Part shown: in pieces, positions 35,854 through 64,000 of the stretch
How positions within the stretch are numbered: the first letter of the stretch is position 1
Layout of the letters: the number at the start of each line of letters is the position of its first letter
Virus record (IMG/VR): IMGVR_UViG_3300050821_009835
Location: 200,913-264,912 of that record
Direction: 5' to 3' (one strand)
Length of the DNA: 64,000 nucleotides
Notes under the pieces: generated by a model
Told to the model about the DNA's origin: nothing
Database searches by the model: none
What the model saw: the letters and a program-made list of their open reading frames with translations, nothing else
Program-made: the position numbers and the translations under genes

Positions 35854-35930
35854 CCACGAGTAGCTCAGTTGGTAGCAGCAATTGGCCGATAACCGATAGG
35901 TCGCAGGTTCGATCCCTGCCTCGTGGACCA
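35854..35930 (+). tRNA. trnI: tRNA-Ile(GAU), CCA encoded, C at position 33
   Basis: Acceptor CCACGAG/CTCGTGG; anticodon arm ATTGG-CCGATAA-CCGAT; T-loop TTCGATC; ACCA end. Confidence 0.9.
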
Positions 35931-36017
35931 AAATTTTAATGGAGGCCAAATATGGCTGAAGAAAAGGAACAGCACGAGGAGTATCCGATGAACGGGCCTT
36001 GTTGCTAGAGGAATTTT

Positions 36018-36099
36018 GCTAGGATGGCTCAGCGGCGACAGCAGCAGTTTCGTACACTGCCATACAAACACAGGGGTTCGAGTCCCCTTCCTAGCTCCA
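36018..36099 (+). tRNA. trnT: tRNA-Thr(CGU), 11-nt variable region, CCA encoded
   Basis: Acceptor GCTAGGA/TCCTAGC; arm GCAGT-TTCGTAC-ACTGC; variable CATACAAACAC; T-arm AGGGG-TTCGAGT-CCCCT. Confidence 0.85.
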
Positions 36100-36104
36100 A
36101 GTTT

Positions 36105-36177
36105 GCAGATGTAACACAATTGGCAGTGTACTTCCTTGGTAAGGAAGAGGTTGTGGGTTCGACTCCCATCGTCTGCT
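36105..36177 (+). tRNA. trnT: tRNA-Thr(GGU), no encoded CCA
   Basis: Acceptor GCAGATG/CGTCTGC; arm CTTCC-TTGGTAA-GGAAG; T-loop TTCGACT. Confidence 0.9.
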
Positions 36178-36215
36178 CTTTCGTGACTTTCTTTAAGAAA
36201 GGTTCATGACGAATT

Positions 36216-36395
36216 ATGAATAACGGGTGCCCATGTAGCAGCTGTCATCCATACGGTGCAGCTTATTGTTGGTGTTTTCTCCACAGACTAGAGCACCCGT
36301 TAGTAGAGAAGATTATCAATGCGGAGAGCTGGCGTGAAACCAGCCAATTGATGAATGAACTTTACACGACGTATTTGAGTCGTTTAGGAAGATAA
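36216..36395 (+). CDS. 59-aa Cys-rich protein inside the tRNA cluster
   Basis: MNNGCPCSSCHPYGAAYCWCFLH...; AAGAAAGG upstream. Confidence 0.5.
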   Translation: MNNGCPCSSCHPYGAAYCWCFLHRLEHPLVEKIINAESWRETSQLMNELYTTYLSRLGR

Positions 36396-36399
36396 GTTT

Positions 36400-36485
36400 G
36401 CTGGTATCGCATAGTGGCCGATTGCAGCAGTTTTGTAAACTGCCGGAGAAATCCCACGGGGGTCCAAATCCCTCTGCCAGCTCCA
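36400..36485 (+). tRNA. trnT: tRNA-Thr(UGU), long variable arm, atypical T-loop, CCA encoded
   Basis: Acceptor GCTGGTA/TGCCAGC; arm GCAGT-TTTGTAA-ACTGC; variable CGGAGAAATCCCAC; T-loop TCCAAAT. Confidence 0.85.
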
Positions 36486-36492
36486 AAATTTT

Positions 36493-36579
36493 AGGGCGGT
36501 CGGGTAATGGCATCCCACCTGACTTTGAATCAGACGAGCCTTCGGCTCATTGTAGGTTCGAATCCTACCCGCCCTGCCA
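36493..36579 (+). tRNA. trnQ: tRNA-Gln(UUG), long variable arm, CCA encoded
   Basis: Acceptor AGGGCGG/CCGCCCT, G73; loop CTTTGAA; variable CGAGCCTTCGGCTCATT; T-arm GTAGG-TTCGAAT-CCTAC. Confidence 0.85.
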
Positions 36580-54231: not shown

Positions 54232-57200
54232 ATGGCAATTTTTGGGTCAACATCATATAATCCACCTGGGATTTATACATCAGTCGTTTTTGCAAATACC
54301 GGGGCACCACTTTTTCAGGCTGCTCGTATCCCGGTGGTGATCGGTGAAGGCACTCAATACTTTACTCAGACCAATGTTGAATTGTTCCGTGGATCTTCAA
54401 GCGTTGCAGACGATCAGGCAGTTAATGAGAACATCACCAATCAGGTAACTGGGCTTACTCGTAATTTTCAGACCACTTATTTCCCAGTCACAGACGGAAC
54501 AGGTAAGGGAATCACTTCTAATGATCCTGCTAGTGTTCAAGTCACAAGCATTGATACAAATGGTAATCAGATTCCTGTCACTGTGATTTCTTTAAACGGT
54601 GCAACTGGTCAATTTAGTACACAGACCATTGTCCCGACTGGGTTTGAACTTTTTATTACTTACTTTTTCAAACGTGGCGACACGTTCATCGCGAATGAAA
54701 ATGAGGCGGCTCAGATTCCAGCTTTTGCAACTCAGACTGTTGTTGGGGCAGCTGCGGGAAGTCCACCAACAGTCGGCTCTGTTACCCTCAGTCTTGCTAA
54801 TCCTGGAGTTTTGGGAAACCTGGTCAGCTTGCAGTTCGTAGCAGGTCCGGCTGTTCCAGATGCTTTGGCTGTAACTGGAGCTGGCACAGATGAAATCATC
54901 ATCAACACTACTTCACAGGCTTCGACTCCACGCACTTTGACTGATCTCGTTTCTTTGATTAACGCAGGGATCCTGACTCTGGATGGCGGTTATTTGACTG
55001 CTGGCAGTATCGCGGGTAATCCATTAACTACATTGATTGCAGGTGGCGCGGTTCTATTTGCCGGTGGTGTAGGTCAGTCTACGAATACGACTTTCCAGAC
55101 CAAATTTGGTCCAATTACGGATGGATCTAATGGTGGTATTGTCACAACCAATCCAACCTTAATCACAGTCTTAGTCGATGGGCTGCCAGCAGTTGTTTCT
55201 TCTTTGAATGGGGCGCAGAGTCAATTCACCCTGGCTCAGCCTGTGGCATACGGTAGCACGCTCACGGCTTCTTATTACTACAACACCTGGGCCAACACGT
55301 TTGATTTACTCCCAGCTTCCAACGTCCAAAGCATTGTTGAGGTTGGCCTCGGACCGAATCGTAGCGATTTTGTCGAGGATGTTGACTTCACTCTTGGCGT
55401 AGACGCCGACGGCAATGGTACCGTCATTTGGGGTCCGGCTGTCAATGAAGCCATTGGGGTTTCTGCTACTGGTGAAACTGCTAATTTTACTCCTCAAGAG
55501 ATTGTCGCATCTGTGGTTGACGAACAAGTATTCCTTCGTCCAATTACAGGTTCTGTCAATGGCAGAAACGCAGTTTTTATTCTGCAGGATACACCAACGG
55601 ATGGAACGGGACAGAATAAGGCTACAAACAACCCATCTTTGATCAACGTGTATGTAGGCGAAGATCCTTTGGAGGCGTTCTTTGCCGGCCCGCAAACTGT
55701 GCTACGACTTTCTGGAACTGCACAGCAATTCACGCTTCAAAATCCTCCGGCGTCTGGAAATGGCGTCTGGGCCAGTTACTATCGCAACACACTCGAAACT
55801 CATGAATATTCCGTAACAGTTGTCAATCCGGGTTATGGCGGATTGGGTTCGTTTATCGTTACAGATGAACTGGAACGAATTGCACCTTTGGCGACTTTTG
55901 TCAGTGGCCACGTAGCACAGAATGCCGGATTCCAAGCAACAGGCATTGTTTACCCAAATGGTACCCCTGATCTTCAAGCTCAGGCGGGTGCAGCGGTTGA
56001 TGAAACTGTTACTTTAACGTTCAACAATGACGGTTCCGCTACTTTAATCCCAGCGACTTCTGCGGGGGTAGTTATTCCTGGTGCTTCAGGTAATTTGACT
56101 TTTACAGCAGGTATCCCAGGTGCGGGCGGAAACTCAGTAACGATAGCGGTTGATGTAACAACTCAGTACCCGCAAGCCTCTGCCCCGGTCTTAGTGAGTG
56201 GGAACGCAATTACTATCTATGCCAATTACAACGGAACGTTGGCAACAAATGCCCAAATTGCAGCTTATTTCCCCTCTGCTGAAACGACAACGGGTGGGGT
56301 GATTACGGCTCATTTTACGGCAGGATCTCCAAAGGTTACAGCAGCAACGGCATTGACTGGCGGAGCGAACGCTGTCACAGTCCCTGTGACTCATAGCTAC
56401 ACGGTCACTTCCAACAATTCTGTGGGTGGTTCTGGAACTGCTGGCAGTAACATTGGGTATCTTGATCAAACCTATGAAGATTTGGCTACAGGGTTCCGTA
56501 TTACAGTTGTAAACCCCGCAGACCATGCCTCTTACGGTGTGCTCAGCATTCCAGAAGGTTACAATTTCGTCCCTGGCGATACACTCACTTTCCAAGTGAA
56601 TGTCGATGCTGCAAGTGGTTCACATCCAGCGGTTCGTTTCTGTGGAACCCCAGGTGTCGCACCTGCTCAATTCAACAATTTGATTTGTATTCCTGGTCTT
56701 CACTTGACTGTCATCAGCAATTTCCAGAGTACAGCGGGAGACTCTGTAATTCTTAGCACTTTCCGTGGAAGCGGCGCTGGCCCGAATGTAGGTGAGTATT
56801 ACTACGTCACCTTCACTACAGGTAAAACTGCTGCCGATTATGCAATTAAGGTCTACAATAATCCTTCGGACGCATACACTGCATATGGTCAGCCATCTAC
56901 AGTCAATCGCCTTAGCTTGGGAATTCAATTCTTGACTGAGAATGGAACGCAAACCTTTGCAGCCATTCAGGTTCCTGTCGTACCAGGAACTAATCAGGCG
57001 GCGGATAGCGATTTCATTGCTGCAATTCAGAGCTTGGCTGCCGCGCTGCCGGGTACAGATGATCAATATGTTGCTGGCGTCATTCCTCTCAGCACCAGCA
57101 CAACGGTGCACCAGAGTTTGAGTCGCTTCTTGATCACCCAGTCAGCTCCAACAATTCAAGCATTTGGAATTGGTTTCGTGGGATATGATCAATTCACAAC

Positions 57201-57846
57201 TGCCAACGAAGCTGTTGCAAATGCAGTAGCTCTGCAAAATGAGCGCATGATCGCCATTGGAAATGCGGTTGCTGGAGTACTCATCACAGATCCTAAGACG
57301 GGTGTTTCAGTTGAATATCCAGTTTCGGGTGAGTTCATGGCGGCTGGTTTGGCAGGTTTGGAATTCAACCCAGCCAACGATGTTGCTACAACTCTTACCA
57401 ACCAGCAGATCACTGGATTCAGTCGTCTGCTCATTATGTATGATATTCCAACCATGAATTTGATGGCTGCAAGTGGGCTGACTGTTCTCTTGAATAATCA
57501 GGGTGCATTGAAAGTTCGCCACTACAAGACAACAGACCCAACTTCTACTCTTACGAGTGAACCAACCAGTGTTACTTCAATCGACTACCTACGGGAGTCT
57601 TTCGAATCTGGGATGCAGCAGTTCATCGGTCGTAAACTGGTGACAGCTCTGGTGACAGATGTTCAAGTTCAAGCCAATAGCATTTTGAACAGTTGGGTGC
57701 AGAACAACCTGGGTTCTGGGTACATGAACCTAGTGGTGCAGCCAGATGCCTCTGATCCGACAACAGTCGATATCAGTGTGCTTGTAAAGCCAATGTTCTC
57801 GCTTTTGTATATTCCCGTAACGTTTACTGTTACGACGAGCCTCTAA
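54232..57846 (+). CDS. Tail sheath protein
   Basis: YNPPGIYT N-terminus; C-terminal GEFMAAGLAG, N.VATTLT...ITGF, VRHYKTT, DYLR...FIGRK, VDISV..KPMFSLLYI.V. Confidence 0.9.
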   Translation: MAIFGSTSYNPPGIYTSVVFANTGAPLFQAARIPVVIGEGTQYFTQTNVELFRGSSSVADDQAVNENITNQVTGLTRNFQTTYFPVTDGTGKGITSNDPASVQVTSIDTNGNQIPVTVISLNGATGQFSTQTIVPTGFELFITYFFKRGDTFIANENEAAQIPAFATQTVVGAAAGSPPTVGSVTLSLANPGVLGNLVSLQFVAGPAVPDALAVTGAGTDEIIINTTSQASTPRTLTDLVSLINAGILTLDGGYLTAGSIAGNPLTTLIAGGAVLFAGGVGQSTNTTFQTKFGPITDGSNGGIVTTNPTLITVLVDGLPAVVSSLNGAQSQFTLAQPVAYGSTLTASYYYNTWANTFDLLPASNVQSIVEVGLGPNRSDFVEDVDFTLGVDADGNGTVIWGPAVNEAIGVSATGETANFTPQEIVASVVDEQVFLRPITGSVNGRNAVFILQDTPTDGTGQNKATNNPSLINVYVGEDPLEAFFAGPQTVLRLSGTAQQFTLQNPPASGNGVWASYYRNTLETHEYSVTVVNPGYGGLGSFIVTDELERIAPLATFVSGHVAQNAGFQATGIVYPNGTPDLQAQAGAAVDETVTLTFNNDGSATLIPATSAGVVIPGASGNLTFTAGIPGAGGNSVTIAVDVTTQYPQASAPVLVSGNAITIYANYNGTLATNAQIAAYFPSAETTTGGVITAHFTAGSPKVTAATALTGGANAVTVPVTHSYTVTSNNSVGGSGTAGSNIGYLDQTYEDLATGFRITVVNPADHASYGVLSIPEGYNFVPGDTLTFQVNVDAASGSHPAVRFCGTPGVAPAQFNNLICIPGLHLTVISNFQSTAGDSVILSTFRGSGAGPNVGEYYYVTFTTGKTAADYAIKVYNNPSDAYTAYGQPSTVNRLSLGIQFLTENGTQTFAAIQVPVVPGTNQAADSDFIAAIQSLAAALPGTDDQYVAGVIPLSTSTTVHQSLSRFLITQSAPTIQAFGIGFVGYDQFTTANEAVANAVALQNERMIAIGNAVAGVLITDPKTGVSVEYPVSGEFMAAGLAGLEFNPANDVATTLTNQQITGFSRLLIMYDIPTMNLMAASGLTVLLNNQGALKVRHYKTTDPTSTLTSEPTSVTSIDYLRESFESGMQQFIGRKLVTALVTDVQVQANSILNSWVQNNLGSGYMNLVVQPDASDPTTVDISVLVKPMFSLLYIPVTFTVTTSL

Positions 57847-61173: not shown

Positions 61174-61938
61174 TTACGTTAAAATACTAGCGGTGTTATA
61201 GCGAATACTGGGCTCAAGTTCTGAGAACGGTTTATTCCAGCGTAGGGCAGAACCTTTGCGACCTAACCAAGAGCGGTACTCATCCGTCATTAGAGCACTA
61301 ATTTTACGTAAATTAGCAGCCGTGTTGGGATGAGCGGATTTACCTTTTTGAGTCTCTGAACGTGCTTGTCTTACTTCTAGCGGAATTTCTCTACCTCGAA
61401 GTTTCTTGGCTCGTTTCTCTATCCACTCTGGGGATTGTTTTCTGCCGCGAGTTTTCTTACCCTGCGCTTCATAGGATGCTCGATTTCTAAGTAGTCCTCT
61501 AGCTTTTCTCTTTTTCCAACCAGCACGTAGGGATTCTTTGTGTGCTTCTGACAACGGTATACCAGTTAGAGCCTTGGAAACATTAGCATTCCATTCTGAA
61601 GTTCTCCAACGAATTACAGGTGGAATAGCTGCATAAGGATTATCGTTGTAGCAATGATCTCCCCAATGAGCATTGATAGCAAGTTGCTCATTATGTCTCA
61701 GTTCTTTCTTAATAGGTGAGCAATGGATGATTGGTTCAAATTCAAAAGCAGATTCTCCATATTTATTCCAATCAGCCTGAAGCCTTAAGTTATGATGGAC
61801 CCCTTTTCTAAGTTCCGCTAAGTGTTCTTTAAACCATCTTCGTTGAAAATTTTTAGAGCTTCCAACGTACACCCAATCTACTGCTGTACAACGAATGAGA
61901 TACACTCCACTATTTAGAATTGGAATATCTGTATACAT
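61174..61938 (-). CDS. GIY-YIG homing endonuclease with NUMOD3 repeats
   Basis: SGVYLIRC...VYVGSS.NFQRRW..H...L..G.HHN..LQ.DWNKYG; LSEAHKESL, QSPEWIEKR. Confidence 0.92.
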   Translation of the reverse strand: MYTDIPILNSGVYLIRCTAVDWVYVGSSKNFQRRWFKEHLAELRKGVHHNLRLQADWNKYGESAFEFEPIIHCSPIKKELRHNEQLAINAHWGDHCYNDNPYAAIPPVIRWRTSEWNANVSKALTGIPLSEAHKESLRAGWKKRKARGLLRNRASYEAQGKKTRGRKQSPEWIEKRAKKLRGREIPLEVRQARSETQKGKSAHPNTAANLRKISALMTDEYRSWLGRKGSALRWNKPFSELEPSIRYNTASILT

Positions 61939-62036
61939 ATCTATCTTGGGTTAGAAAGTCGCAATATCGCTAATTAAAAACGATCGCAAGATTTTTCCCA
62001 TTAAAGTAGGGTCGTTACCCTTTAAGGAGCTAACTT

Positions 62037-62905
62037 ATGTCACAACTTGGCTTAATAGCTAGGCCAAGAAAAATCTCTTCTGATTGACTTGAACCCTGAA
62101 ATGGGAACAAGGCGGAACCCGTAAAAGGGACCGTGAGAGACTAAGCGAAGAGACTCCGAAAAGGAGATGCGATAGTCCGCTCTCATGGGAATTATAAACC
62201 ATGAGAGGTAGGCAGAAATGCCCTACCCTCGTTCAAAGAGCGAGTAACAAAAAGGATATTTATCGTCAAGGTACCTCGGCACAGACTGAAACAGTTGTAA
62301 GCAGCCGATTTACTATTTTCAGCCCCGCTGTGGATGTGGGCAAATTCGTGAAATTGGGCGTGACTTCATCCTTCACGATCACAGAATCTAAGACCGTTGA
62401 TGCAGTACGCGGCCTTGGTTACGGTGATATCATCGCAGAATTAGTGCCTGGTGTCACTCAACCGATGACACTGGCGATCACTCGTACAGCTCTCTATCTA
62501 GCTAACCTCATGCAGATGATGGGTTATAAGGCGGGAGTATCGGGTGCTGTTCGTTCACTCAAACATCACAAGTGGCCCTTTGATATTCGTACTGAAATTG
62601 TTTTCTCGCAGATCGCTTCAGAAGACCCGAATATCCAGAATGCTACTTTAGCAGATATCCCGAATGAAGGCGGTTTAAACAATACGGGCAATCCTGGTCT
62701 ATATGCGGTTGCAACCGTATACGAAGGCTGCTGGATGGAGAACTACAACACAGGGTACCAGATTGAACAGGCCGCCGTGACTGAAGACTGCTCCGTTGTT
62801 GTTACAGACGTTTTCGACGTGGCTGGTAGTGTCTATGGTGAATTTATTGACAGTGGTAACAATACTGGCGATGCTACTGGTCGCTCTCTAATCTTCACCA
62901 CCTAA
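62037..62905 (+). CDS. Tail tube protein, spliced: join(62037..62052,62256..62905)
   Basis: AAGGAG RBS, ATG 62037. Spliced N-terminus MSQLGYIYRQGTSAQTETVVSSRF; tube-like VGV..SF..TESK.VD.VRGLGYGD.IAELVPG..PM.L.I.R. Confidence 0.85.
62053..62255 (+). ncRNA. ORF-less group I intron, 203 nt
   Basis: P1 CTTGGCT/GGCCAAG with U.G at the 5' splice site; P3 TCTCTTC/GAAGAGA; P4-P5 CTTG..CCC-TGAAAT-GGG..CAAG; P6 GCGG/CCGT; P7 G-A-GACTA/TAGTCC; P8 CTCC-GAAAA-GGAG; P9 TCTCATGG/CCATGAGA; terminal G; splicing restores the frame. Confidence 0.93.
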
Positions 62906-62911
62906 CAATCT

Positions 62912-62940
62912 AGGCGAAGGCATTTAAAATGCCTTCGCCT
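62912..62940. terminator. Perfect long hairpin after the tube gene (terminator or stabilising stem)
   Basis: AGGCGAAGGCATTT-A-AAATGCCTTCGCCT; no strong U-tract. Confidence 0.55.
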
Positions 62941-62957
62941 CATTAAGGTTGCCCGAA

Positions 62958-64000
62958 ATGAACACCTTGACGAATAACCCTGAAGACAGAGTGCCTATAA
63001 ATGAAGCTGGTTTCAAAAAACCACTTAGACAAAAGAAAGGCAATGGTTATCCTTTTGGAGAATCGGAACTTCGATTGGTGCCAGTTTCTTCTTTATACCC
63101 AACTCAAGAGATTGTAATTTCTTCAATAGTGAGTAAACACATGAACTCTCTTGAAACAAGGCCTCCAGAAGTTGTGGACACGAATGGAAAACTTCTTGTA
63201 GCTGATGGTCATCATCGGATTGCTGCTGCGATAGCTAAAGGAGACAAAAATATCTTGGTATCTGTATTTCCCAAGTGGGGGGCTAAAGGAAGTACTGAAG
63301 GTTGGGGTGAAGTAAGAACTTGGAAGATAAATAAAGCTAACGCTAACGCTAACGATAGTCCACTTCTACAACATCATAAGACCAAAGTTGCACTAGACGC
63401 ACTCCTTGAAATGTATGCTGACCCCACTCGTGCTACTGAGACGGGCGATTGGCACGCTGACCCTGACTATGATGATCCACTCGCCATGAAGGGGACAGAA
63501 CCTGAAAACGTGAAGTACGGCGACGCACCCCTTCCCGCTCAGAAAACAGATGGAGTAGATCCAACATTGAATCCTGAAGACAAAATCTTCAAACGCAGTA
63601 AACCCGCAGCGGATCTCTCAATGGTCATTTCTGCCGCTGGCGGACGGAGTTTTATGTACAAACATTTCAAAGATGCGCATACTGCTCACGCTCATCTTGT
63701 AGAGACAGCGCGTTACTATCATGTTGCTGACTTCGGTCAAATTTGGGCTTGGGCGGAGAAGAATTTTCCTGTTAAAGAAGCTGTAGTCGAACAGAAATTA
63801 ACTCCTAAGATGTTACCTCAGCGCGATGATATGCGCGGACATTTGGATGAGGATGTTAAAGACGAGATAAATGAGATAGTGGATGCTCCTGTAATGCAAG
63901 GTGCGAAAGGTGTGCATATCGGGGCGTCGCAAGCAGAAATTTTGAAGGCGTTTGACCATCTTCTGAATCTTTTGTATGGTACAAGTCCAAATGAACTTAG
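62958..64000 (+). CDS. ParB/Srx-like N-terminal domain fused to a low-complexity region, runs off the window (not in ORF track)
   Basis: Frame open from ATG 62958 to the window end; VPVSSLYPTQ...PPEVV....LLVADGHHRIAAA. Confidence 0.75.
   Translation, partial: MNTLTNNPEDRVPINEAGFKKPLRQKKGNGYPFGESELRLVPVSSLYPTQEIVISSIVSKHMNSLETRPPEVVDTNGKLLVADGHHRIAAAIAKGDKNILVSVFPKWGAKGSTEGWGEVRTWKINKANANANDSPLLQHHKTKVALDALLEMYADPTRATETGDWHADPDYDDPLAMKGTEPENVKYGDAPLPAQKTDGVDPTLNPEDKIFKRSKPAADLSMVISAAGGRSFMYKHFKDAHTAHAHLVETARYYHVADFGQIWAWAEKNFPVKEAVVEQKLTPKMLPQRDDMRGHLDEDVKDEINEIVDAPVMQGAKGVHIGASQAEILKAFDHLLNLLYGTSPNEL

What the first reader, a model, noticed from the sequence alone, without database searches (positions are those of the whole stretch)
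62053..62255. 203-nt group I intron in the tail tube gene, near the minimal size for this ribozyme class
Seen: P1 and P3-P9 can all be drawn, with U.G at the 5' splice site, the P7 guanosine-binding pair and a terminal G. Removal turns the track's false start into MSQLGYIYRQG. Known: the Azoarcus tRNA intron (about 205 nt) is the benchmark minimal self-splicing intron, and classic phage introns sit mostly in DNA-metabolism genes. Insertion after codon 5 of a highly expressed structural gene makes tube synthesis splicing-dependent, a possible timing control (inference).
Basis: partly seen in the sequence, partly recalled or inferred. Interest (0 to 1): 0.7.

Follow-up and report, generated by a model that had tools for sequence, protein, structure and literature searches.

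The report
Spliced group I intron in tail-tube gene
A 203-base self-splicing-type (group I) intron really does interrupt the sixth codon of a soil jumbo phage's tail-tube gene and is precisely removed in environmental RNA, but it is an ordinary-sized member of a very large family of compact phage introns rather than a special minimal or regulatory element.

Summary
Confirmed. Window 62053-62255 is a 203-nt ORF-less group I intron in codon 6 (T|AT, Tyr) of a tail-tube-fold gene (exon 1 62037-52, exon 2 62256-905). A soil metatranscriptome contig joins 62052 to 62256 exactly, with no mismatch, while the DNA run keeps the intron. A public 221-aa protein starting MSQLGYIYRQG is the predicted spliced product. 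About 50 intronless homologues start M-x-Q-G-G-Y-[IV]-Y-[RQ]-Q-G.

A covariance model built from four related copies finds about 200 copies in phage contigs but only one in this 265-kb genome. The drawn helices pair in 92.7% of cells (36-43% when slid), and 49 of 52 pairs show compensatory changes. P7, which was left out of the model, has an invariant G-C at the predicted guanosine site. Rfam RF00028 misses the family.

The family's median predicted length is 201 nt and a 171-nt variant is predicted, so 203 nt is typical, not minimal. Only 4 of about 33 alleles carry the intron, which fits a selfish mobile element better than a timing control. All four intron-bearing alleles have a free-standing GIY-YIG endonuclease gene directly upstream, which suggests, without proving, collaborative homing. 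This is a new member of a known kind.

The parts
62024..62029 (+). Shine-Dalgarno AAGGAG, 7 nt before the true start codon. The RNA contigs begin at 62021.
   Evidence: Sequence. RNA contig 5' ends at 62021.
62037..62052 (+). Exon 1 of the tail-tube gene: ATG + 4 codons + the first base of the Tyr codon. Its last 7 nt form the 5' strand of P1.
   Evidence: Intronless homologues start M-x-Q-G-G-Y.
62053..62255 (+). 203-nt ORF-less group I intron (P1, P3-P9, P9.1, P9.2, no P2), with the U.G pair at the 5' splice site and terminal G62255.
   Evidence: Exact 203-nt skip in an RNA contig. Covariation on 135 relatives. Model R1 scores 204 bits here.
62137..62143 (+). P7 5' strand G[A]GACUA. G62139 pairs with C62177 and is the predicted guanosine-binding pair next to the bulged A62138.
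   Evidence: P7 was not in the model, yet it pairs in 99.9% of cells. The G-C is invariant in 130/130, and the pair before the bulge covaries GC:84/AU:44.
62173..62178 (+). P7 3' strand UAGUCC, preceded by J8/7 AUGCGA. It resembles the AUAGUC element of the RF00028 consensus.
62256..62905 (+). Exon 2 of the tail-tube gene (AT of the Tyr codon, then IYRQGTSAQ... to the stop). The spliced product is 221 aa.
   Evidence: 73% identity to Tunturi_5 gp329 starting exactly here. P0002 is the spliced product. Tail-tube fold.
61174..61938 (-). Free-standing GIY-YIG homing endonuclease gene (254 aa), divergent from the tube gene and 98 nt from its start codon.
   Evidence: Pfam PF01541 at 3e-9. phrog_314 homing endonuclease at 2.5e-19. 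Homologues sit upstream of all other intron-bearing alleles.
54232..57846 (+). Tail sheath homologue (1204 aa) upstream on the same strand. This is context that supports the tube assignment.
   Evidence: phrog_2839 tail sheath at 2.6e-19.

Best explanation
Window 62053-62255 is a compact, ORF-less group I intron inserted in phase 1 of codon 6 of the tail-tube gene of an uncultivated soil jumbo phage (a 265-kb contig related to Tunturiibacter phage Tunturi_5).

Shown: the transcript starts near 62021. The intron is removed exactly between U62052 and A62256, giving an mRNA for a 221-aa protein MSQLGYIYRQG.... The RNA has the group I core topology: P1 with U.G, the P3/P7 pseudoknot enclosing P4-P6, then P8 and P9, a G-C pair beside a bulged A in P7, and a terminal G. 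It belongs to a large phage-borne family of roughly 170-220-nt introns found at many different gene sites.

Inferred: excision is autocatalytic, by the standard two-step guanosine-initiated transesterification. Without splicing, ribosomes starting at 62037 would stop at TGA 62085-87 after 16 codons, so tube synthesis depends on splicing.

Inferred with less confidence: the intron is a selfish mobile element. It spreads together with the adjacent free-standing GIY-YIG endonuclease gene by double-strand-break repair (collaborative or trans homing). It does not serve as a regulatory device.
For: RNA:
- An 821-nt metatranscriptome contig (depth 10.9, 0 mismatches) skips exactly 62053-62255, with no shared letters at the joint. 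The DNA contig of the source sample is colinear with the intron.
- Three RNA runs cover exon 2 and none covers the intron. One further RNA contig breaks exactly at 62256.
- A JGI 943-nt contig equals 62021-62052 + 62256-63166 and encodes P0002 = MSQLGYIYRQG....

Comparative:
- Intronless alleles begin M-x-Q-G-G-Y-[IV]-Y-[RQ]-Q-G.
- The same site carries related introns in L018, L047 and L105, with a compensating IGS change: exon UUGGCU with GGCCAA versus exon GUGGCU with GGCCAC.
- In L018 and L047 the frame inside the intron has stops a few codons before exon 2, so no internal start is possible there.

Structure:
- z = -6.1.
- 92.7% of cells pair, and 49 of 52 pairs show double changes. P7 was not modelled, yet it pairs in 99.9% of cells with an invariant G-C.
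- A P1 with U.G lies next to the core in 50% of 134 distinct copies, against 3% in shuffles.
- Core motifs resemble the RF00028 consensus (AGACUAA, AUAGUC, AUUG..GAA).
- Model R1 also hits introns in split ribonucleotide reductase genes of cultured phages, including one place that RF00028 scores weakly.

Mobility:
- 4 of 4 intron-bearing alleles have an upstream GIY-YIG gene, against 5 of 27 intronless alleles (Fisher p = 0.004).
- All four share ATATTTATC at the start of exon 2, which no intronless allele has.
- There is only one copy in the 265-kb genome.
Against: - Rfam RF00028 gives no match at the site, even at E<=10 in a 501-nt search.
- Self-splicing was not shown. RNA contigs prove excision, not autocatalysis.
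- The spliced RNA evidence rests essentially on one sample. The JGI contig and run X2 probably hold the same data. An RNA library can also contain DNA of an intronless strain.
- The endonuclease link is weak. GIY-YIG genes also sit upstream of intronless alleles. The Fisher test ignores phylogeny. Across the whole family only 9-14% of copies have a GIY-YIG-like ORF within 200-500 nt, against 5-7% of random positions.
Confidence: 0.9

Rival explanations
1. There is no splicing. The gene starts at the internal ATG 62201 (MRGRQKCPTLVQRASNKKD-IYRQG...). The 'spliced' contigs would then come from DNA of a co-occurring intronless strain that contaminated the RNA libraries.
For: An ORF 62201-62905 exists. 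The read-laying tool warns that RNA libraries can hold DNA. Intronless alleles are common in nature.
Against: - No Shine-Dalgarno precedes 62201, and the 19-aa extension has no homologue.
- A strong SD+ATG at 62024-62039 would be left producing a 16-aa peptide.
- The junction contig is 100% identical over 821-943 nt on both sides.
- The DNA runs show no such joint.
- RNA coverage is patchy in a gene-wise manner: depth 10.9 on the tube gene and 0 on its flanks.
- In L018 and L047 stops lie inside the intron frame.
Confidence: 0.03
2. The intron is retained because it acts as a regulator. Splicing efficiency would gate or delay tail-tube synthesis.
For: The position, 16 nt after the start codon of a highly expressed late gene, makes expression strictly dependent on splicing. 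Ribosomes on the unspliced RNA would run through the 3' strand of P1 and through P3 before stopping at 62085-87, so translation and folding could interact (sequence).
Against: - Only 4 of about 33 distinct alleles of the gene carry it.
- The same intron family sits at many unrelated sites, often several per gene.
- It co-occurs with homing endonuclease genes.
- No condition-dependent data exist.
Confidence: 0.08
3. The intron and the neighbouring GIY-YIG gene are independent invaders. Both happen to favour the conserved 5' end of the tube gene, and the intron's spread does not depend on this endonuclease.
For: - GIY-YIG genes occur upstream of 5 intronless alleles.
- The window's endonuclease gene is on the opposite strand to those of L018, L047 and L105, and is only 31-50% identical to them.
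- Family-wide enrichment of GIY-YIG near the introns is only about two-fold.
Against: The 4/4 co-occurrence. The identical 9 nt at the start of exon 2 in all intron-bearing alleles suggests co-conversion. There are precedents for collaborative homing (PMC3984707).
Confidence: 0.45

Closest known systems
Compact ORF-less group I introns of huge phages (Jug phages; also crAss-like phages), PMC12880540
   Same: They are about 206 nt on average, ORF-less, and interrupt essential genes including structural and packaging genes. Stand-alone homing endonuclease genes are abundant nearby. Splicing was verified by metatranscriptome reads.
   Different: Those are gut phages of Bacteroides and carry about 18 introns per genome, found with GISSD-subtype covariance models. 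Here the host is a soil phage related to an Acidobacteriota phage, with a single copy in 265 kb, and RF00028 does not see it. Whether the two sets are one sequence family could not be tested, because no sequences or supplements were held.
   Same: The size is similar. It has the same minimal core without large peripheral domains. By my recollection of the Azoarcus sequence, the P7 region is similar (G[A]GACUA followed by a short J7/3 and P3').
   Different: Azoarcus sits in a tRNA anticodon loop and has a P2 (established knowledge). This intron sits in a protein-coding gene, lacks P2 and has two extra 3' hairpins (P9.1, P9.2) with a conserved CAGAAAUGA loop. Subgroup membership was not testable here.
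Cyanophage S-PM2 psbA intron with free-standing F-CphI, and T4 mobE/I-TevIII: collaborative or trans homing (PMC3984707, PMC6083498, PMC2790892)
   Same: An ORF-less intron of about 200 nt sits in a conserved phage gene, with a free-standing endonuclease gene immediately beside it.
   Different: The endonuclease family differs (GIY-YIG here). Model R1 finds nothing in S-PM2 or T4. Cleavage at the insertion site is untested, and the endonuclease gene also occurs without the intron.
Classical phage group I introns (T4 td, nrdB, sunY; Twort orf142; mostly IA2)
   Same: They are phage-borne, lie in protein-coding genes and are removed at the RNA level.
   Different: Those are larger, often carry an internal endonuclease ORF, and have extra helices. 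R1 does not match the T4 or Twort genomes.
Introns splitting ribonucleotide reductase genes of Roseobacter phage CRP-118 and Brochothrix phage BtpYZU04/A9
   Same: R1 places them in the same family: L179 2000-2186 at 66 bits and L180 1864-2051 at 31 bits. The latter is also scored weakly by RF00028.
   Different: The host gene differs (a nucleotide metabolism gene). They are not annotated as introns in those records, and splicing was not examined here.

Membership tests
Group I intron | The 5' splice site follows a U that forms a U.G wobble inside P1 with an internal guide sequence. | tested here: met
   U62052.G62062 lies within the 9-bp P1. The RNA junction is exactly after U62052. The IGS covaries with the exon among alleles. 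A P1 with U.G lies next to the core in 50% of copies against 3% of shuffles.
Group I intron | The last intron nucleotide is a guanosine (omega G). | tested here: met
   G62255 is the last skipped base, and the joint has no positional ambiguity ('both' = 0).
Group I intron | Core topology: P3/P7 pseudoknot enclosing P4-P6, with P8 between P3' and P7', then P9, supported by covariation. | tested here: met
   All 10 helices pair in 81-100% of cells. 49 of 52 pairs have compensatory changes. Slid controls pair in 36-43%. The alignment was fitted to a model containing every helix except P7.
Group I intron | Guanosine-binding site: a conserved G-C pair in P7 beside a bulged nucleotide. | tested here: met
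   G62139-C62177 is invariant in 130/130 relatives and lies next to the bulged A. The flanking pair covaries GC/AU. Binding itself is not testable.
Group I intron | Conserved core sequence elements (R- and S-like AGACUAA and AUAGUC; AAUUG...GAA at J3/4-P4). | tested here: met
   By eye against the RF00028 consensus printed. The window has GAGACUAAG, CGAUAGUCC and GAUUGACUUGAA.
Group I intron | Score at or above the gathering threshold of Rfam RF00028. | tested here: not met
   No hit at gathering score, nor at E<=10 on 501 nt, nor in the whole contig. Other copies of this family are also missed. This is a limit of the model's sensitivity (no P2, short P5/P6), not a failed structural feature.
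Group I intron | Protein-independent splicing initiated by exogenous guanosine with Mg2+. | not testable with these tools
   Only excision in environmental RNA is shown.
Collaborative-homing pair (ORF-less intron + free-standing homing endonuclease) | A free-standing homing endonuclease gene lies adjacent to the intron-bearing gene. | tested here: met
   A GIY-YIG ORF at 61174-61938 (-), with Pfam 3e-9 and phrog_314 2.5e-19. Low-depth RNA contigs cover it.
Collaborative-homing pair (ORF-less intron + free-standing homing endonuclease) | The intron and the endonuclease gene are co-inherited across alleles. | tested here: inconclusive
   4/4 intron-bearing against 5/27 intronless alleles carry it, p = 0.004, uncorrected for relatedness. 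Family-wide enrichment is only about two-fold.
Collaborative-homing pair (ORF-less intron + free-standing homing endonuclease) | The endonuclease cuts intronless alleles at or near the intron insertion site and spares intron-bearing ones. | not testable with these tools
   This needs a cleavage assay.
Tail tube protein of contractile tails (host gene) | Tube-family fold. | tested here: met
   AF2 model with pLDDT 76.7. The Foldseek PDB top hits are tube proteins of phage 812, PVC/AFP/CIS, A-1(L), monocin, SPP1 and Hcp, with E from 2e-6 to 1e-3 and target-normalised TM of 0.55-0.74. BFVD gives phage G gp180/gp179 and named tail tube proteins.
Tail tube protein of contractile tails (host gene) | Sequence-family assignment and a sheath gene nearby. 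| tested here: inconclusive
   There is no Pfam or PHROG hit for the protein itself. Distant homologues hit phrog_985 'virion structural protein'. A sheath homologue lies 4 kb upstream on the same strand. A role as the major tube rather than a tube-like paralogue is not settled.

The most novel reading that the evidence does not exclude
The window's intron represents a large, phage-borne and so far unmodelled compact lineage of group I introns. It is P2-less, has a conserved CAGAAAUGA loop in P9.1, and is invisible to Rfam RF00028. Its natural variants go down to about 170 nt, which would be smaller than the Azoarcus benchmark. At the tube-gene site it would spread as a two-part mobile unit with a free-standing GIY-YIG endonuclease that targets the conserved 5' end of the gene.
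Probability: 0.3. Interest if true: 0.55.

Novelty: new member of a known kind. Interest (0 to 1): 0.38.

Why it matters
- Annotation: the called ORF (62201-62905) has a false start. The true product is the 221-aa spliced protein, and gene callers will mis-annotate this conserved tail-tube gene wherever the intron is present.
- Method: the standard Rfam model misses a family with hundreds of copies in phage metagenomes. Intron content in soil and environmental phages is therefore probably under-counted. The model built here (R1) or the alignment A3 could seed a proper family.
- Ribozyme work: the family offers many natural, covariation-rich, roughly 170-210-nt variants at defined sites. These include pairs at the same insertion site with and without the last two hairpins.
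- Phage evolution: the locus is a candidate example of an intron plus a free-standing GIY-YIG endonuclease moving together in a structural gene.

Tried and rejected
- Rfam at gathering score and at E<=10 gave no group I hit at the site, only a chance miRNA match on the P9 hairpin.
- Megablast of the 3-kb region against cultured phages gave nothing.
- blastn of the intron gave only partial hits in split RNR genes.
- The first AF2 model, from a 19-sequence alignment, had pLDDT 49.7 and was not used.
- A profile search of PDB sequences gave nothing. Pfam and PHROGs gave nothing for the tube protein itself.
- My first automatic splice-site caller, based on open frames, mis-placed sites, including the window's 3' site. 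It was replaced by a P1-adjacency test.
- The apparent 156-nt 'mini' copy in L060 turned out to be an intron with an ORF inserted in P8, not a small intron.
- The idea that family members generally sit next to GIY-YIG genes gave only a two-fold enrichment.
- R1 against T4, Twort, S-PM2 and Tunturi_5 gave no hits, so no link to characterised introns was found.
- The supplements of the Jug phage paper were not held. A literature search for the S-element motif was uninformative.
- The promoter/terminator scan found nothing above chance near the gene.
- Subgroup (IA-IE) assignment was not possible because no subtype models were available.

Full report
**What is in the sequence**

A strong ribosome-binding site (AAGGAG, 62024-62029) and an ATG at 62037 open a frame that runs only 16 codons before TGA at 62085-62087. 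The long ORF listed mechanically for the region, 62201-62905, starts at an ATG with no ribosome-binding site.

Similarity to the closest cultured relative begins exactly at 62258 with IYRQGTSAQ. That relative is gp329 of Tunturiibacter jumbo phage Tunturi_5, a 'virion structural protein' at 73% identity. It carries only eight residues before this motif.

**Check of the drawing**

- P1 (62046-54 with 60-68) contains the U62052.G62062 wobble.
- Five A residues then lead directly into P3, so there is no P2.
- P4, P5, P6 and P6a follow.
- P7 is G[A]GACUA paired with UAGUCC, with a bulged A next to the G62139-C62177 pair.
- P3' follows after a 3-nt joiner, then P8, a 6-nt J8/7, P9, two further hairpins, and ...AAAAAGG ending in G62255.

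The minimum-energy fold reproduces most of these helices. It is 6.1 standard deviations more stable than dinucleotide shuffles.

**Direct RNA evidence**

Public runs holding this DNA include the probable source metagenome (X1) and three soil metatranscriptomes (X2, X3, X5).
- In X2, an 821-nt contig (depth 10.9, no mismatch) joins 62052 to 62256. It skips exactly 203 nt (TA..GG), with 32 and 789 nt on the two sides and no letters shared between them, so a repeat artefact is unlikely.
- The DNA contig of X1 runs straight through the intron.
- No RNA contig covers 62053-62255, although all three RNA runs cover exon 2.
- The X3 contig ends its match exactly at 62256 with seven further letters that do not continue into the intron.
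- RNA coverage is gene-wise: 10.9 on the tube gene, about 3 on part of the endonuclease gene, and 0 on the flanks. Contaminating DNA would not look like this.

Separately, the protein database holds a 221-aa protein, P0002, that starts MSQLGYIYRQGT. It was called on a 943-nt JGI contig that equals 62021-62052 plus 62256-63166 without a mismatch. This contig and the X2 contig both start at 62021. They are probably the same data, so I count them as one sample. Their shared end suggests a transcription start there.

**Comparative evidence**

Fifty-four related loci from IMG/VR were fetched. Nearly all are intronless and begin M-x-Q-G-G-Y-[IV]-Y-[RQ]-Q-G-T, with a Shine-Dalgarno sequence just upstream. 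The spliced window product, MSQLGYIYRQGT, fits this, with the Tyr codon split T|AT.

Three other alleles carry a related intron at the identical position:
- L018 (209 nt).
- L047 (207 nt).
- L105.

In these three the exon reads GGTGGCT and the guide sequence GGCCAC. In the window the exon reads CTTGGCT and the guide GGCCAAG, which is a compensatory change in P1. In L018 and L047 the frame upstream of exon 2 contains stop codons inside the intron, so no internal start could rescue the gene. L047 also has a second related intron (223 nt, with a P2 hairpin) further inside the same gene.

**The family**

A motif from the P6'-P7-P3' region occurs in at least 120 stretches of viral contigs (the scan hit its limit). 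It occurs in only 27 stretches of 185,579 prokaryote genomes. All 27 are MAG contigs, and several are from Acidobacteriota.

A covariance model (R1) was built from the four tube-gene introns. It contains all helices except P7 and P1. It found 166 matches in 100 sources and 43 more in 34 others, often several per locus. It found only one in the window and one in the whole 265-kb contig.

On the resulting alignment (135 distinct rows):
- 92.7% of cells form standard pairs, against 36-43% when the partners are slid by 1-3 columns.
- 49 of 52 pairs show changes on both sides.
- No shuffle out of 500 reaches the observed values.

The alignment was fitted to the model, which favours the modelled helices. 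P7 was not modelled. It still pairs in 99.9% of cells, its G-C next to the bulge is invariant (130/130), and the pair on the other side of the bulge alternates G-C and A-U (84/44).

A P1 hairpin with a U.G pair lies directly before the core in 50% of 134 distinct copies, against 3% of shuffled controls, with entirely different exon sequences.

**Why Rfam is silent**

RF00028 gives nothing at the site, even with E<=10 on a 501-nt stretch. It also misses other family copies. The consensus it prints for a true hit elsewhere carries the same core words as this family: AAUUGCGGgAAA, GGUUCAaAGACUAAAcG and GAUAUAGUC. One Brochothrix phage RNR intron is scored weakly by both RF00028 and R1 at the same place. 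I read the failure as a lack of sensitivity for a P2-less, short-armed variant, not as evidence against group I membership. R1 in turn does not match the classical introns of T4 and Twort or anything in S-PM2. No characterised intron could therefore be tied to this family, and the subgroup stays open.

**The host gene**

- A model built on a 76-sequence alignment (pLDDT 76.7) matches tube proteins of phage 812, extracellular contractile injection systems, cyanophage A-1(L), monocin, SPP1 and Hcp. Foldseek E values run from 2e-6 to 1e-3, with target-normalised TM of 0.55-0.74.
- The best viral matches are phage G gp180/gp179 and named tail tube proteins.
- A 1204-aa sheath homologue lies 4 kb upstream on the same strand.
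- Sequence libraries say only 'virion structural protein'. A tube-like paralogue cannot be excluded.

**Size**

Predicted full lengths of family members with a clear P1 have a median of 201 nt and an interquartile range of 197-208. The window's 203 nt is therefore typical.

At one shared insertion site in homologous genes, L097 carries a 201-nt copy. L107 carries a 171-nt copy that lacks P9.1 and P9.2 but keeps an open frame across the predicted junction. That variant is unverified.

Introns averaging 206 nt, about 18 per genome, confirmed by metatranscriptomes and interrupting terL and other essential genes, have been described in gut Jug phages (PMC12880540). Compact introns in huge-phage genes outside DNA metabolism are thus already known.

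**Mobility and function**

A 254-aa GIY-YIG homing endonuclease gene lies 98 nt upstream of the start codon on the opposite strand. After dereplication, all four intron-bearing alleles have a GIY-YIG gene immediately upstream. In L018, L047 and L105 it is on the same strand, at 31-50% identity to the window's. Among intronless alleles with enough flank, 5 of 27 have one. Fisher p = 0.004, not corrected for relatedness.

All four intron-bearing alleles share ATATTTATC at the start of exon 2, which none of the intronless alleles has. This could reflect co-conversion or a P10 requirement. The pattern resembles the 'collaborative homing' described for an ORF-less intron plus a free-standing endonuclease (PMC3984707).

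Three findings weaken this reading:
- The endonuclease gene also occurs without the intron.
- Its orientation differs in the window.
- Across the whole family a GIY-YIG-like ORF lies within 200-500 nt of only 9-14% of copies, against 5-7% of random positions.

I hold this at roughly even odds.

Nothing supports a timing function. The intron is a minority allele state (4 of about 33). The same element sits at many unrelated sites. It is present once in this genome.

**Verdict**

This is a spliced group I intron in a tail-tube gene. It is one more member of a known kind of element. The secondary results are modest: a large Rfam-invisible family, a predicted 171-nt natural variant, and a possible intron-endonuclease partnership.

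Noticed in passing
window 61174-61938 (-): A free-standing GIY-YIG homing endonuclease gene runs divergently from the tube gene. Homologues sit directly upstream of the tube gene in L018, L047 and L105 (intron-bearing) and in L026, L031, L024/L027, L038, L046 and L020 (intronless; the last two look shortened).
   Followed up: partly
L047 3054-3276: A second intron of the same family (223 nt, with a P2 hairpin) sits inside the same tube gene, between codons for ...SSRF and KIF... This allele therefore has two introns about 55 nt apart.
   Followed up: partly
L107 11968-12116 (-) versus L097 4205-4383 (+): Homologous genes have the same insertion site. One intron is predicted at 171 nt (no P9.1/P9.2) and the other at 201 nt. 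If active, the shorter would be well below the Azoarcus size.
   Followed up: partly
L060 941-1492: A family member appears to have a protein-coding insert starting in the P8 loop. R1 matches the two halves separately, so some copies may carry their own ORF.
   Followed up: no
L179 2000-2186 (Roseobacter phage CRP-118) and L180 1250-3710 (Brochothrix phage BtpYZU04): Ribonucleotide reductase genes are annotated as separate fragments and are in fact split by introns. CRP-118 has one copy of this family. The Brochothrix gene has four group I-like matches. None is annotated as an intron in the records.
   Followed up: partly
window 62021: The RNA contigs of the tube gene begin at 62021, 16 nt before the ATG. 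This may be the transcription start. No sigma-70-like promoter was found upstream.
   Followed up: no
window 35854-36576 (+): A cluster of five tRNA genes, three with long variable arms. This is typical of jumbo phages such as Tunturi_5, which has 43.
   Followed up: no
window 62949-63998+ (+): The gene after the tube gene runs off the contig end. It has weak ParB-like nuclease / DNA-binding matches (Pfam 0.004, phrog_21912 9e-5), and parts of it are shared with the corresponding position of related loci.
   Followed up: no
L105 1161-2171 (-): A second, different GIY-YIG endonuclease gene lies directly downstream of the intron-bearing tube gene, so that allele is flanked by endonuclease genes on both sides.
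   Followed up: no
DNA runs X1 and X4, matches to window 62070-62112 and 62160-62192: Short contig pieces (3-4 mismatches) match only the P3-P5 or P9 parts of the intron and continue into unrelated sequence. They are other copies of the family in the same soils.
   Followed up: no
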